Positions 39,279 to 42,212 of a stretch of 64,000 nucleotides of DNA are shown here, one piece after another. Position 1 is the first letter of the stretch. Each line of letters opens with the position of its first letter. A model generated the notes under the pieces. That model did no database searches. It saw nothing but the letters and a program-made list of their open reading frames with translations, and had not been told where the DNA came from. The DNA lies in assembly GCF_902652985.1 (NCBI RefSeq), contig NC_047028.1:9424001-9488000 (forward strand), written 5' to 3'. This DNA is from Pecten maximus. Its lineage: Eukaryota. Position numbers and translations under genes: made by a program.

Positions 39279-39418
39279 TCAAACAGTTGTGTGTTTTTTG
39301 AAGTCCAGGGAGGCCGAGTTTACACAGTAACGGACACACATTGGTTTTGGTCCGTCGTCGAACACATGCCCCAGGTGAGCACCACACTTGCTACACATAG
39401 CCTCGATCCGCCGCTGAC
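39279..39418 (-). CDS. MSRB3: Methionine-R-sulfoxide reductase B3-like, alternative last exon B (distal)
   Basis: Acceptor tttttatcttgacacag|GT is phase 1, matching the donor at 42040. Encodes (G)[45 protein letters not shown], with the second Zn CxxC, HLGHVF and catalytic RYCxNS. Confidence 0.9.
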
Positions 39419-40478
39419 CTGTGTCAAGATAAAAATATCTATCATGTACTGTACAACAAAGCTTGATCAATTCTCTTGGGTGTCCCTCACAGGAACCTCC
39501 CATACAAAAGGTACCAGTAATTTTGTCAGCCGGTTTATTTGTCCAATACTAATGCCAAGATCTCATATTCTCACACATGGTGAGGCCATTAGGGCCACTT
39601 TACAGTGCGATCATACTGAAACAACATAACTTGGCTGTGTAGTACAACATTTCCCTCAGTCACCACGTTATAATGACAATGATCAAACCATCATGGAAGG
39701 CAGTCCTAGGTACCATTTCATAAAACTTTCAAACTTTCCAATTTTCATTAATATTTATGAAAATGTTGGCAAAACTTTTTAACTTCTTAATTATATGTAA
39801 AAGTCCATTTCACAAAGGTGTCTGTAACATTTTTCATAATTTATGAAAGGAAGAAAATTGAAGTCCCCAGTTGCAGACATGTTCTCCAAGTAAAAATATA
39901 CTGCTCTCTAAAGTGGAGGTATAAGCAGACAACACTGTTTGGATAAATATTTGTTCGCTGTGCCCGGTCTGGAATCATACCCTAAACAATTCTCTCATTG
40001 AAAGAAAATCAAATTTTCTATAAAAACTAAATACTATTTTTTTTTAATGAAAATTTAACAATTCCTAGAATGTTAGAAATTGAATGTTAGAAATCGTGAT
40101 TTGCATTTACATTTGTACATTGTAATCAGTCCTGAGTCGTGATTTTTCCCTTCCTCCTATTGTCTATGATGAGTTAATTATGCGTTTTTATAGGTCCTCA
40201 CTTGAAGTAAACCATATTTTTTTGTAAAAATAGAACATTTAAGAAAAGTGTTTCTGTAAAAATAGAACATTTAAAGAAAAGTGTTCACATCATTTTACAA
40301 GTGGAACATCTGACACTTCTGGTGCTCCATTTCAAATTGGAGTTATCTCCCTTCATATATGTTGTAGTGCCAACACTGGAAGGGGTATCCGTAATAAGTG
40401 ATGAAATATATAGCTAGGTGGTTAAATACAATATCTCTTGGCTATGAATAACAAAAACTTTATACCATTACATTCATC

Positions 40479-40484
40479 TTTATT
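40479..40484 (-). terminator. Candidate proximal polyadenylation signal for last exon A
   Basis: AATAAA on the minus strand ~93 nt after the exon A stop, followed ~20 nt later by the U/GU-rich stretch GTTTTTGTTATT. Confidence 0.5.
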
Positions 40485-40576
40485 TAAATTTCATAAGGAC
40501 AACAGTACTCCATTATCAATTTTACTTGTTCAGTGACTTATTTTAAATAAGATTAATTTGAGTCTTCACTGTGATA

Positions 40577-40746
40577 TCAGAGCTCTGGTTTATAAGCGTC
40601 AGCCTTCCGAGACTTGCTGGAGGGCGAAAAGTCGAGGGAGGCAGAGTTTATACAGTAACGGAGGCCAGTTTCTGTTGGACCATCATTGAACACATGACCT
40701 AGATGGGCCCCACACCTAGCACACATGACCTCGACTCTCTCCATAC
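40577..40746 (-). CDS. MSRB3: Methionine-R-sulfoxide reductase B3-like, alternative last exon A (proximal)
   Basis: Not in the ORF track. Acceptor tgtctttgctatag|GT, phase 1. Encodes (G)[55 protein letters not shown]; the KDEL-like end parallels KAEL of vertebrate MsrB3. Confidence 0.93.
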
Positions 40747-40984
40747 CTATAGCAAAGACAGGGACACAGTTCTATAGAGTTTTATCAACTGATTCAGTGG
40801 TACTTAACAGGAATTTTCAACACTTTTATTTTAGTTTAATATTGTTTTCTTCTTGTAACAAATACATTAAAACAGGAGAATCAAGCAAATTACTGCCTTC
40901 CACCAAATCTGAAAATATGTAAAAAAAAAAAAAAATGCACGGATAATGAATTTGTGCAGAAACTTATTCTAGGCAGAATGTCTC

Positions 40985-41555
40985 AGTCTTTAGTTGACTA
41001 GTTAGTTACTGGTTTACCACCTACATGACTCCTCCTGTTGCTAGGTTTAATCTAACGGACTATTAGTCAGTGTTTTGTTGACTATAGTTAGTTACTGGTT
41101 TACCACCTACATGACTCCTCCTGTTGCTAGGTTTAATCTAACGGACTATTAGTCAGTGTTTTGTTGACTATAGTTAGTTACTGGTTTACCACCTACATGA
41201 CTCCTCCTGTTGCTAGGTTTAATCTAACGGACTATTAGTCAGTGTTTTGTTGACTATAGTTAGTTACTGGTTTACCACCTACATGACTCCTCCTGTTGCT
41301 AGGTTTAATCTAACGGACTATTAGTCAGTGTTTTGTTGACTATAGTTAGTTACTGGTTTACCACCTACATGACTCCTCCTGTTACTATAGGTTTAATCTA
41401 ACGGACTATTAGTCAGTGTTTTGTTGACTATAGTTAGTTACTGGTTTACCACCTACATGACTCCTCCTGTTACTATAGGTTTAATCTAACTGACTATTAG
41501 TCAGTCTTTAGTTGACTAGTTAGTTACTGGTTTACCACCTACATGACTCTACCTT
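40985..41555. repeat. 86-bp tandem repeat, ~6.5 copies, intronic
   Basis: ACTGGTTTACCACCTACATGACTCCTCCTGTT recurs every 86-89 bp. Confidence 0.95.
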
Positions 41556-42039
41556 TAGCTTAAGATATACAGTTGTAGAGTGGAAGGACAGAAGGCTACA
41601 GGACAGTCTCAACACATACCTATATATAGCCCCCACTCCCCCATCCCCATCCCCTGAACACCCCCTGTATCATTTTGTGAAATTTTCACTTGGTGGAAAT
41701 TAGGAGTTTTATTTGCAGTAAAAATGTCAGATAAGGAAGAAGAACGAGACTCGTAGATTGATGGATTTCACATGTCACCACATAAAAAATACCAGATTTT
41801 GGAGTTTTAATGTCTTCAACAGGAAAAATGGACACCATACACCGTGAGAATAGGGCCTGTATTCTGCCCCAGCCTCATTTCAGAATAGGGAGCCTATAGC
41901 TAGGATACAATAAATGAGAATCGGAAAAGCTAATCATCATTACAAAGTATCAACTTAAGTATTCACATCCATACCCTTCCTACATATTTTCTAATGTATC
42001 TTTGCTGGGTCCCACGTAATACAGACTATAGGTATATAC

Positions 42040-42212
42040 CTTGTGACATGTCTGTCATCAATTTCACGCTGTCACTCTTGGAGACATCAGAGAAAGAGGG
42101 CCATCCTGACTTGGAGTCGAACTTGGTGTCGGAGTCGAATAGCGGGTTCCCACATACAACACAGTGATAAAGCCCCTCATCGCTGTGTTTATAGTACTTT
42201 CCCGAGAACGCT
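42040..42212 (-). CDS. MSRB3: Methionine-R-sulfoxide reductase B3-like, common internal exon
   Basis: Not in the ORF track in this frame. ttttgttgtacatttcag|A ... CAAG|gtatat; 173 nt, phase 2 to phase 1. Encodes (R)[57 protein letters not shown](G), with the first Zn CxxC and the GWPSF motif. Confidence 0.95.

What the first reader, a model, noticed from the sequence alone, without database searches (positions are those of the whole stretch)
39279..42212. MsrB3 gene with two duplicated, mutually exclusive catalytic last exons: one splice choice swaps the active-site half and the localisation tag
Seen: exon 42040-42212 ends in phase 1. Two separate downstream exons (40577-40746 and 39279-39418) each have a phase-1 AG acceptor, an intact frame, the second Zn-binding CxxC, HLGHVF and catalytic RYCxNS. 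They share 27/40 residues over the homologous part and differ at many synonymous positions (CTA/CTG, CAT/CAC, GGT/GGG, TCT/TCG, TTT/TTC), as expected for an old duplication kept by purifying selection. I found only one GWPSF exon, so both must share it. Exon A ends KPEL and has its own AATAAA; exon B ends HTTV. Established: vertebrate MSRB3 changes compartment through alternative N-termini and has a single KAEL-ending last exon. Inference: here alternative last-exon use gives a 188-aa ER-retained enzyme and a 178-aa non-retained enzyme (secreted, or cytosolic/mitochondrial if paired with another N-terminus) with a different active-site loop. I do not know of this being described, but cannot check.
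Basis: partly seen in the sequence, partly recalled or inferred. Interest (0 to 1): 0.9.

Follow-up and report, generated by a model that had tools for sequence, protein, structure and literature searches.

The report
Scallop MsrB3 with two last exons
A scallop gene for the protein-repair enzyme MsrB3 really does end in either of two old, duplicated last exons that each supply the catalytic end of the enzyme but carry different tail signals. Both forms are already listed as automatic database isoforms, so this is a neat and conserved but not unprecedented case of alternative splicing.

Summary
On the minus strand lies a gene similar to MsrB3 (the methionine-R-sulfoxide reductase B family): exon 1 at 46917-46694, exon 2 at 42212-42040, then two homologous last exons, A (40746-40577, ending KPEL) and B (39418-39279, ending KKHTTV). 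Transcript contigs show exon 2 joined to A in all 4 runs laid and to B in 2 independent studies. The two products (188 and 178 aa) are identical to NCBI's Pecten maximus isoforms X1 and X2, so the isoforms are already annotated. I found no paper describing them.

The same exon order (exon 1, exon 2, A, B) and the same tails (A ends K[S/P]EL, B ends [K/R]K-x-TTV) occur in oysters, two unidentified bivalve-like contigs and the brachiopod Lingula. Gastropod, chiton and nemertean loci carry only B. Both exons are under purifying selection (omega 0.14 and 0.04), and both isoforms are predicted to fold as complete MsrB domains.

The most likely mechanism is a choice between alternative last exons, a proximal splice plus polyadenylation against a distal splice. 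This swaps the last third of the catalytic domain and the C-terminal signal. That A is retained in the ER is inferred. The role of B's invariant tail is unknown. This is a new member of a known kind and of moderate interest.

The parts
46694..46917 (-). Coding part of exon 1. It runs from the ATG at 46917 through a hydrophobic N-terminus (MSIVGLRVAGLCIIWMNIIHLV) and two Cys (C38, C47) to the start of the SelR domain. It ends ...GGAAAG before a GT donor, in phase 2.
   Evidence: ORF and donor were read. The sequence is identical to the N-terminus of NCBI P. maximus isoforms P0295 and P0204. The 11-residue hydropathy maximum is 2.18.
42040..42212 (-). Shared exon 2. It holds the first CxxC zinc pair (C92, C95) and the SGWPSF motif. 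It ends in phase 1 at the donor used for both last exons.
   Evidence: It scores 68.6 bits against SelR profile positions 16-76. Transcript contigs cover it in all 4 runs.
40577..40746 (-). Proximal last exon A. It holds the second CxxC, HLGHVF, catalytic RYCINS, a variable linker and KPEL-stop. It gives the 188-aa isoform X1.
   Evidence: The joint 42040>40746 appears in all 4 runs at contig depths 332, 332, 17 and 18. P0295 is the matching protein. A-type exons ending K[S/P]EL occur in 7 other species or contigs.
40465..40576 (-). Short 3' UTR of the A mRNA, with AATAAA at 40484-40479.
   Evidence: The hexamer was found. Contigs of X1 and X19 end at 40465, about 15 nt past the hexamer (table 8).
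39279..39418 (-). Distal last exon B. It holds the second CxxC, HLGHVF, catalytic RYCVNS and the tail KKHTTV-stop. It gives the 178-aa isoform X2.
   Evidence: The joint 42040>39418 appears in X2 and X20, two different studies, at depths 8.35 and 5.94. P0204 is the matching protein. B-type exons ending [K/R]KxTTV occur in at least 16 other species or contigs.
38030..39278 (-). Probable long 3' UTR of the B mRNA, ending beside AATAAA at 38036-38031.
   Evidence: In X2 and X20 the contigs run on from exon B to 38972. All runs cover 38030-38972. The hexamer was found. Oyster B mRNAs also have 1.1-2.5 kb 3' UTRs. Continuity across 38961-38972 is not shown.

Best explanation
This is the Pecten maximus gene similar to MsrB3, a zinc-containing methionine-R-sulfoxide reductase. 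It has two tandemly duplicated alternative last exons.

After exon 2 the transcript takes one of two routes. Either it is spliced to the proximal acceptor at 40746 and cleaved just past the AATAAA at 40484, which gives the A form. Or it runs on and is spliced to the distal acceptor at 39418, which gives the B form with a long 3' UTR. Exon A carries a stop codon and its own poly(A) signal, so a mature mRNA carries one exon or the other.

Each exon supplies the same structural piece: the last four beta strands, with the second CxxC zinc pair, the HLGHVF substrate-binding histidines and the catalytic Cys in RYCxNS. Both products should therefore be active enzymes. They differ next to the catalytic Cys and at the C-terminus.

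- A has a floppy linker ending KPEL, a KDEL-like ER retrieval signal. With the shared hydrophobic N-terminus it is expected to be ER-resident, like vertebrate MSRB3A.
- B ends in the short, nearly invariant tail [K/R]K-x-T-T-V, has no retrieval signal, and is expected to go elsewhere.

Shown here: the exon anatomy, both splice joints, identity to the annotated isoforms, cross-species conservation and purifying selection, and fold compatibility.

Inferred: that both forms are active, that A is retained in the ER, where B ends up, and what regulates the choice.
For: - Anatomy and frames.
- Both joints are seen in transcript contigs, with canonical GT..AG ends. A is joined in 4 runs and B in 2 independent studies.
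- A-form contigs end about 15 nt past the AATAAA.
- The products equal NCBI P. maximus isoforms X1 (188 aa) and X2 (178 aa).
- In Crassostrea the genomic order is exon 1, exon 2, A (KSEL), B (KKQTTV) (L015). Fully spliced exon 1-exon 2-B mRNAs are assembled in 8 different runs.
- The same order and tails occur in Lingula anatina (L018) and in contigs L011-L014.
- In a tree of the 39 core residues, all 8 A exons fall on one side and all 16 B exons on the other (support 87/86).
- dN/dS between two related species is 0.14 for A and 0.04 for B, while the intron between the exons is unalignable. Pecten A against B gives dS 1.38 and omega 0.16.
- Both isoforms match the whole Pfam SelR domain at 172.6 and 163.1 bits. 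Their best solved relative is human MsrB3, at E 5e-55 and 1.5e-52.
- AlphaFold models have identical secondary-structure order and pLDDT about 95 over the swapped part. A's tail is disordered, with pLDDT below 50. The B model superposes on 6Q9V at TM 0.89 and rmsd 1.0.
- KDEL-like signals tolerate many residues at the second position: KAEL of MSRB3, and also KTEL, KVEL and PGEL (PMC2140024).
Against: - RNA support for B in the scallop rests on two short contigs with only 30 nt on the exon 2 side. X1 and X19 show no B joint and no cover of exon B, although they cover the region downstream of it.
- Contig depth cannot rank the isoforms.
- No localisation or activity data exist. KPEL and KSEL were not among the motifs I could find tested.
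- Both annotated isoforms share the same hydrophobic N-terminus. A B form with no retrieval signal would then be secreted, which fits poorly with a tail that looks like a cytosolic PDZ ligand.
- Lingula has an A exon ending KSEL, but its annotated protein has no hydrophobic N-terminus.
- The AU test on the 39-residue core rejects a within-species A+B clade only for Crassostrea (p 0.03). It does not reject it for Pecten (p 0.23) or Lingula (p 0.19). A single old duplication therefore rests mainly on the shared tails and exon order.
Confidence: 0.85

Rival explanations
1. The functional point of the switch is not simply retained versus not retained. Exon B's invariant C-terminal [K/R]K-x-T-T-V would itself be a positive signal. 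It fits the class I PDZ-ligand consensus S/T-x-V-COOH, or it could be another sorting signal. In this reading B is the main, older lophotrochozoan form, and A is the specialised ER form.
For: - The tail has a fixed length of six residues and is almost invariant from nemertean and chiton to gastropods, bivalves and a brachiopod.
- B has the lowest omega, 0.04.
- B is the only last exon within 10 kb in the Aplysia, Lineus and Liolophura loci, in L007, and on the short contigs L009/L010.
- Proteins from outside the bivalves start at MNIL with no hydrophobic N-terminus and no upstream ATG, so they are likely cytosolic, where a PDZ ligand could act.
- The PDZ consensus itself is established knowledge. 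It was not tested here.
Against: - In bivalves the B mRNAs include the upstream ATG and the hydrophobic N-terminus. That would place the tail in the lumen or outside the cell, away from PDZ domains.
- The tail may instead be conserved for structural reasons. The last block of the B model has pLDDT 88.
- No partner is known.
Confidence: 0.3
2. Exon B is a decaying or noisy duplicate. It would be occasionally spliced in, automatically annotated, and without function.
For: In the scallop runs laid here, B joints have lower contig depth than A joints and are absent from X1 and X19.
Against: - The frame, all four motif classes and the stop codon are intact.
- B-type exons are conserved across at least three phyla with a nearly invariant tail.
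- Omega is 0.04.
- Full-length B mRNAs are assembled in many oyster runs.
- B is the sole last exon found in several lineages.
Confidence: 0.03
3. Exon B belongs to a separate downstream paralogue with its own upstream exons, rather than to the same gene as exon A.
For: Tandem gene duplicates are common in bivalve genomes. That is background knowledge only.
Against: - No second exon 1 or GWPSF exon lies between A and B or anywhere else in the window.
- The genome's other SelR loci are distant paralogues, at most 53% identical over the exon.
- Contigs join exon 2 directly to B.
- Oyster mRNAs read exon 1-exon 2-B without a break.
Confidence: 0.02

Closest known systems
Vertebrate MSRB3, with the ER form MSRB3A and the mitochondrial form MSRB3B
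   Same: - It is the best solved relative of both isoforms, at 58% identity and TM 0.89.
[quoted passage not shown]
- It has a KDEL-like C-terminus: KAEL there, KPEL or KSEL in exon A.
- One gene serves more than one compartment through alternative splicing (PMC7475093, PMC1431549).
   Different: - Vertebrates switch the N-terminal targeting exon and keep a single last exon. Here the last exon is switched, so part of the catalytic domain changes along with the tag.
- Pecten has CX8C, not CX5C, after the leader.
- The B tail has no vertebrate counterpart that I saw.
Alternative exons derived from tandem exon duplication (mutually exclusive homologous exons)
   Same: - Adjacent homologous exons sit in the same phase.
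- One exon is used per mRNA.
- The origin is ancient and both copies are under purifying selection.
- The fold is preserved (PMC9741552, PMC8373072).
   Different: Most described cases are internal exons chosen by splicing alone. Here the pair are terminal exons, so the choice couples splicing to the use of the proximal poly(A) site.
The alternative last exons KRAS4A/4B and those of CDC42
   Same: Two homologous last exons each complete the end of the globular domain and carry different C-terminal targeting sequences. They have been conserved for hundreds of millions of years (PMC9882654).
   Different: - The protein family and the targeting chemistry differ: lipidated membrane anchors there, a luminal retrieval signal and an unknown tail here.
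- The KRAS 4A exon is proposed to have been captured from a paralogue, not duplicated in place.

Membership tests
MsrB / SelR domain (PF01641) | Match to the full-length domain above the curated cut-off | tested here: met
   P0295 scores 172.6 bits and P0204 scores 163.1 bits, both covering profile positions 1-116 of 116 against a cut-off of 24.9.
MsrB / SelR domain (PF01641) | Catalytic Cys in R-Y/F-C-x-N-S, the substrate-binding His motif H-x-G-H-V/I-F, and the WP-S/A-F motif | tested here: met
   All are present in exon 2 plus A and in exon 2 plus B. They are invariant columns in the 35-sequence alignment.
MsrB / SelR domain (PF01641) | Two CxxC pairs that bind structural zinc | tested here: met
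   C92/C95 lie in exon 2, and C141/C144 lie in both A and B. Zinc binding itself was not tested.
MsrB / SelR domain (PF01641) | MsrB fold | tested here: met
   The AlphaFold models have mean pLDDT 87.2 (B) and 85.0 (A), with the same order of strands. The B model against 6Q9V gives TM 0.89, rmsd 1.0 and E 1.8e-20.
MsrB / SelR domain (PF01641) | Met-R-sulfoxide reductase activity | not testable with these tools
   This needs an enzyme assay of both recombinant isoforms.
MsrB3 subtype (ER form) | Closest to MsrB3 among the solved MsrBs; Ser rather than Cys before GWP | tested here: met
   Human MsrB3 is the top hit for both isoforms, ahead of MsrB2 and MsrB1. The motif reads KSGWPSF.
MsrB3 subtype (ER form) | N-terminal signal peptide | tested here: inconclusive
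   A hydrophobic core of about 15 residues is present in Pecten and three other bivalves (hydropathy 2.2-2.5). It is absent from the Lingula, gastropod, chiton and nemertean proteins. No signal-peptide predictor or experiment was available.
MsrB3 subtype (ER form) | N-terminal CX5C resolving cysteines after the leader | tested here: inconclusive
   Pecten has C38-x8-C47. Tegillarca, Potamilus, Pinctada, Lingula and contig L012 have CX5C, and the oysters Crassostrea and Saccostrea have CX6C. Their role in human MsrB3 comes from PMC7475093. Function was not tested.
MsrB3 subtype (ER form) | C-terminal KDEL-like retrieval signal | tested here: met
   Exon A ends KPEL. All 7 other A-type exons end KSEL. 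This is a pattern match only. KAEL of MSRB3 and other variants at the second position were ER-localised in PMC2140024, but KPEL and KSEL were not found in that paper.
Alternative exons from tandem exon duplication | Adjacent homologous exons, same phase, each used with the same upstream donor | tested here: met
   A and B share 27 of 40 residues. Both need a phase-1 acceptor. Both joints start from donor 42040.
Alternative exons from tandem exon duplication | One exon or the other in a mature mRNA | tested here: met
   A carries a stop codon, an AATAAA and contig ends. No A>B joint was reported. Oyster B mRNAs contain no A exon. Contigs cannot exclude rare read-through molecules.
Alternative exons from tandem exon duplication | Both copies conserved across species | tested here: met
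   The A/B pair lies in the same order in Pecten, Crassostrea, L011-L014 and Lingula. Omega is 0.14 and 0.04. The A/B split in the tree has support 87/86. The AU test is decisive only for Crassostrea.
Class I PDZ-binding C-terminus (considered for exon B) | S/T-x-V/I/L at the free carboxy-terminus | tested here: met
   The tail reads -T-T-V in 17 of 19 B exons compared, -T-T-L in one and -T-I-V in one. This is a pattern match only.
Class I PDZ-binding C-terminus (considered for exon B) | Tail exposed to the cytosol and bound by a PDZ protein | not testable with these tools
   The topology of the B form is unknown, and bivalve B forms carry the hydrophobic N-terminus. No partner was sought.

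The most novel reading that the evidence does not exclude
The A/B pair of last exons is an ancient lophotrochozoan device, older than the split between brachiopods and molluscs. It would let one MsrB3 gene make two enzymes: an ER-retrieved one, and one whose invariant [K/R]K-x-TTV carboxy-terminus is an undescribed sorting or docking signal for a methionine sulfoxide reductase. An example would be tethering the enzyme to PDZ scaffolds near specific oxidation-regulated substrates. Gastropods, chitons and nemerteans would then have kept only the docked form.
Probability: 0.3. Interest if true: 0.6.

Novelty: new member of a known kind. Interest (0 to 1): 0.35.

Why it matters
Methionine sulfoxide reductases are known to reach different compartments through alternative first exons. 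This gene does it at the other end, and in doing so it also exchanges the catalytic third of the enzyme. The case is clean, conserved and supported by RNA. It joins a small class of alternative terminal exons derived from duplication that re-address a protein, as KRAS4A/4B do.

The B tail is nearly invariant across phyla, which points to a function for invertebrate MsrB3 that nobody has tested.

The finding matters less than first thought because automatic annotation already lists both isoforms, and because the general mechanism is well known.

Tried and rejected
- Five literature searches found nothing on alternative last exons in any MsrB: MsrB with molluscs or bivalves, splice variants, SelR in Drosophila, and MSRB3 with KAEL. 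Only alternative first exons are described (PMC1431549).
- The scan's earlier notes held nothing for this place.
- The locus of P0002, a B-type exon on a 2.8-Mb contig, could not be fetched because the file was too large.
- The called-gene coordinates for L011 did not match its DNA. I re-read the ORFs instead.
- The idea that the extra Cys in Pecten's B loop (C-V-R-Y-C) is a conserved resolving cysteine was dropped. No other B exon has it.
- A recent or species-specific duplication was considered. dS is near saturation (1.38), and A and B do not pair by species in the tree. However, the AU test rejects such a pairing only for the oyster.
- I did not build or type a joined exon model. Exon B was searched alone by reference. 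All full-length work used the database's own proteins, P0295 and P0204, by id.
- I did not try to identify the species of L007, L009/L010 or L011-L014.
- No complex prediction was run, because no binding partner is proposed with enough grounds.
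Full report
**What is in the sequence**

On the minus strand, exon 42212-42040 follows a TTTCAG acceptor. It encodes [40 protein letters not shown]...MTDMSQ and ends one base into a codon, before GTATAT. Two exons lie downstream. A (40746-40577) and B (39418-39279) each follow a polypyrimidine tract and AG, and each is open only in the frame that phase 1 requires. Each encodes a second CxxC, HLGHVF and RYC[I/V]NS, followed by a stop codon. A ends ...[18 protein letters not shown] and B ends ...DFKKHTTV.

Over the homologous 40 codons, 27 residues are identical. Eleven codons differ only synonymously, and nucleotide identity is 70%. tblastn finds no other match to exon 2, A or B in the window.

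In the whole 918-Mb assembly, the Pfam SelR profile (the MsrB domain) hits only these three exons and two distant paralogues on other contigs. Those paralogues are at most 53% identical to A or B.

The first coding exon is 46917-46694. It has an ATG, a hydrophobic N-terminus and two Cys, and it ends ...GTE plus AG before a GT donor. Exon lengths sum to 188 codons with A and 178 with B. An AATAAA lies 93 nt after A's stop codon.

**Are both exons used?**

I laid Logan contigs of four public runs of the same species on 38000-43999. The joint 42040>40746 (exon 2 to A) appears in all four runs, at contig depths 332, 332, 16.9 and 18. The joint 42040>39418 (exon 2 to B) appears in X2 and X20, which come from different studies, at depths 8.35 and 5.94. 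Both joints skip sequence that ends GT..AG on the coding strand.

The B contigs carry only 30 nt of exon 2. That is what a de Bruijn unitig gives where the graph forks at a shared donor. They run on through exon B to 38972.

X1 and X19 have near-identical figures and are probably one data set filed twice. That leaves three independent data sets, and B is seen in two of them. A-form contigs end at 40465, about 15 nt past the AATAAA. All runs cover 38030-38972, which ends beside another AATAAA. This suits a 3' UTR of about 1.25 kb for the B mRNA.

One point is unexplained. X1 and X19 cover that downstream stretch at depth 24-31 but do not cover exon B. The tool warns that its filter makes holes that prove nothing. 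Contig depths cannot rank the isoforms.

**Identity and existing annotation**

I searched exon B alone, by reference, against 1.84 billion representative proteins. It found many short ORF calls and one full-length protein ending [K/R]K-x-TTV. A search with the C-terminal region of that full-length protein (P0011) returned named proteins. One is 'methionine-R-sulfoxide reductase B3, mitochondrial-like isoform X2 [Pecten maximus]' (P0204, 178 aa). Searching with the shared part of P0204 returned 'isoform X1 [Pecten maximus]' (P0295, 188 aa).

Their sequences are exactly exon 1 + exon 2 + B and exon 1 + exon 2 + A. The window is therefore from the king scallop, and both isoforms are already in NCBI's automatic annotation. 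I built no joined model of my own. All full-length work used these database proteins by id.

**Family membership**

- Both isoforms match the whole SelR domain, at 172.6 and 163.1 bits against a cut-off of 24.9.
- Human MsrB3 is the best solved relative of both, at E 5e-55 and 1.5e-52. It ranks ahead of bacterial MsrB, MsrB2 and MsrB1.
- AlphaFold models from a 35-sequence alignment have mean pLDDT 85.0 (A) and 87.2 (B). Helices and strands come in the same order, and pLDDT is about 95 over the part encoded by the swapped exon.
- A's last 10-14 residues are disordered, while B's short tail is moderately confident.
- The B model superposes on human MsrB3 (6Q9V) with TM 0.89 and rmsd 1.0 Å.
- As in MsrB3, the Cys before GWP is replaced by Ser, and two Cys follow the hydrophobic leader. 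Pecten has CX8C, several relatives have CX5C, and the oysters have CX6C. CX5C is the resolving pair in the human enzyme (PMC7475093).

**How old is the pair?**

Contigs fetched for the B-type hits show the arrangement in other animals.

| Source | Exon order or content | A tail | B tail |
|---|---|---|---|
| Crassostrea, contig L015 | exon 1, exon 2, A, B | KSEL | KKQTTV |
| Unidentified contigs L011-L014 | A then B (exons 1 and 2 upstream in L012-L014) | KSEL | KKHTTV or KKQTTV |
| Lingula anatina (brachiopod), L018 | exon 1 at 10001, exon 2 at 10625, A at 12862-13026, B at 14932-15066 | KVKSEL | KKWTTV |
| Aplysia, Lineus (nemertean), Liolophura (chiton), L007, each within 10 kb | B only | none | present |
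| Short contigs L009/L010 | B only | none | present |

Named proteins extend the picture.

- Proteins with A tails: Saccostrea, Potamilus, Pinctada and Lingula.
- Proteins with B tails: Tegillarca, about ten gastropods, a chiton and a nemertean.

In oysters, fully spliced exon 1-exon 2-B mRNAs with 1.1-2.5 kb 3' UTRs were assembled in at least eight different runs.

Across all 30 last exons compared, every A ends K[S/P]EL after a linker of variable length. Every B has exactly six residues after DF, reading [K/R]K-x-T-T-V with two near variants, TTL and TIV.

In a tree of the 39 core residues, with the tails left out, all 8 A exons fall on one side of a branch and all 16 B exons on the other (support 87/86). 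No A and B pair up by species.

The data set is small. An AU test rejects a within-species A+B clade for Crassostrea (p 0.03) but not for Pecten (p 0.23) or Lingula (p 0.19). The case for one old duplication, predating the split of brachiopods and molluscs, therefore rests mainly on the shared tails and the shared exon order.

A-type cores (C[I/M]NSAAL) resemble the human last exon. B-type cores are CVNS[A/C]SL.

**Selection**

- Between the related species of L011 and L012, omega is 0.14 for A and 0.04 for B (dS 0.46 and 1.08). The sequence between the exons gives no blastn match.
- Pecten A against B gives dS 1.38 and omega 0.16.
- An allele seen in X1 differs from the window at eight sites in exon A. 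Four are synonymous changes in the core, one is a loop change (T>A), and three are replacements in the floppy tail.

Both exons are clearly maintained by selection.

**Mechanism**

The best-supported mechanism is a choice between alternative last exons. Either the transcript is spliced to the proximal acceptor and cleaved at A's poly(A) site, or the proximal exon is skipped and the transcript is spliced to the distal acceptor. Either exon supplies the last four strands of the MsrB fold, with two of the four zinc ligands, the substrate-binding histidines and the catalytic Cys. The two products should therefore both be enzymes. All of this is shown at the level of sequence, RNA joints and predicted fold. 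Activity is inferred.

For localisation, bivalve proteins have a hydrophobic N-terminal extension of 12-15 residues ahead of a conserved MNIL motif (hydropathy 2.2-2.5). Proteins from Lingula, gastropods, a chiton and a nemertean start at MNIL, have no upstream ATG and no hydrophobic core.

With that leader, A's KPEL or KSEL is most simply an ER retrieval signal like KAEL of MSRB3A. Published tests show that the second position of the motif tolerates A, T, V, E and G (PMC2140024). I did not find P or S tested.

The fate of B is open. With the same leader and no retrieval signal it would leave the ER. Yet its invariant tail fits the cytosolic class I PDZ-ligand pattern and is shared with species whose protein has no leader. 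Lingula's A form, with KSEL but no leader in the annotated model, is also unexplained. I rate ER residence of A at about 0.6, and any specific reading of B's tail at about 0.3.

**Comparison with what is known, and novelty**

Msr enzymes are known to be re-addressed by alternative first exons (PMC1431549). I found no paper on alternative last exons in MsrB.

As a mechanism, this belongs to the well-described class of alternative exons derived from tandem exon duplication (PMC9741552). The closest analogues are the terminal-exon cases KRAS4A/4B and CDC42, where homologous last exons finish the globular domain and carry different targeting tails (PMC9882654).

The isoforms are already in RefSeq for the scallop, oysters and Lingula, and the mechanism is a known kind. 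I therefore class this as a new member of a known kind. It is a tidy, ancient, conserved example with an intriguing untested tail motif, and it is not a surprise for the field.

Noticed in passing
L004 (G000:C1:19131781-19135002), bases 4-108, minus strand: A paralogue elsewhere in the scallop genome, similar to MsrB1, has an in-frame TGA exactly where the catalytic Cys should be (..GTNRY*IFSDSLEF). This is probably a selenocysteine MsrB1.
   Followed up: partly
L007:5820-7678 (unidentified animal, ENA ERZ25069853): About 20 tandem partial copies, roughly 97 bp apart, of the 5' part of MsrB exon 2 (AFSGKYVHMNEYGVFTCV...) sit directly upstream of the real exon 2 at 7686-7853. This looks like a minisatellite seeded from an exon-intron boundary.
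   Followed up: no
window 38030-38972: In runs X1 and X19 this stretch downstream of exon B is covered at depth 24-31, while exon B itself has no cover. Either the tool's filter removed a contig or the stretch is also transcribed on its own.
   Followed up: partly
window 40983-41549, 42255-42459, 44767-45985, 49764-52994: The gene is full of minisatellites. There are 86 bp x 6.6 copies in the intron between exon 2 and A, 34 bp x 6 just upstream of exon 2, and 155 bp x 7.9 in intron 1. A 3.2-kb satellite of 37/111-bp units lies upstream of the gene and creates long spurious ORFs.
   Followed up: no
window 39330-39345 (exon B loop); gastropod proteins P0178-P0192: Extra cysteines lie four residues from the catalytic Cys. 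Pecten B has C-V-R-Y-C, seen in no other B exon compared here. Ten of the eleven gastropod B exons have C-V-N-S-C, and Physella has N there. The gastropod one could be a resolving Cys.
   Followed up: partly
L019:9900-10000 (Aplysia): The frame upstream of the MNIL start is open and very hydrophobic for about 33 codons (..FLSCFLVSLFLFLPSLFVHCIASVLLSPAR) but contains no ATG. This may be chance in a T-rich leader, or a hint of a start that is not annotated.
   Followed up: no
window 23200-25250: A block with GC 0.53 and strong GC and AT skew has ORFs of about 600 codons on both strands. It is probably low-complexity or repeat sequence.
   Followed up: no
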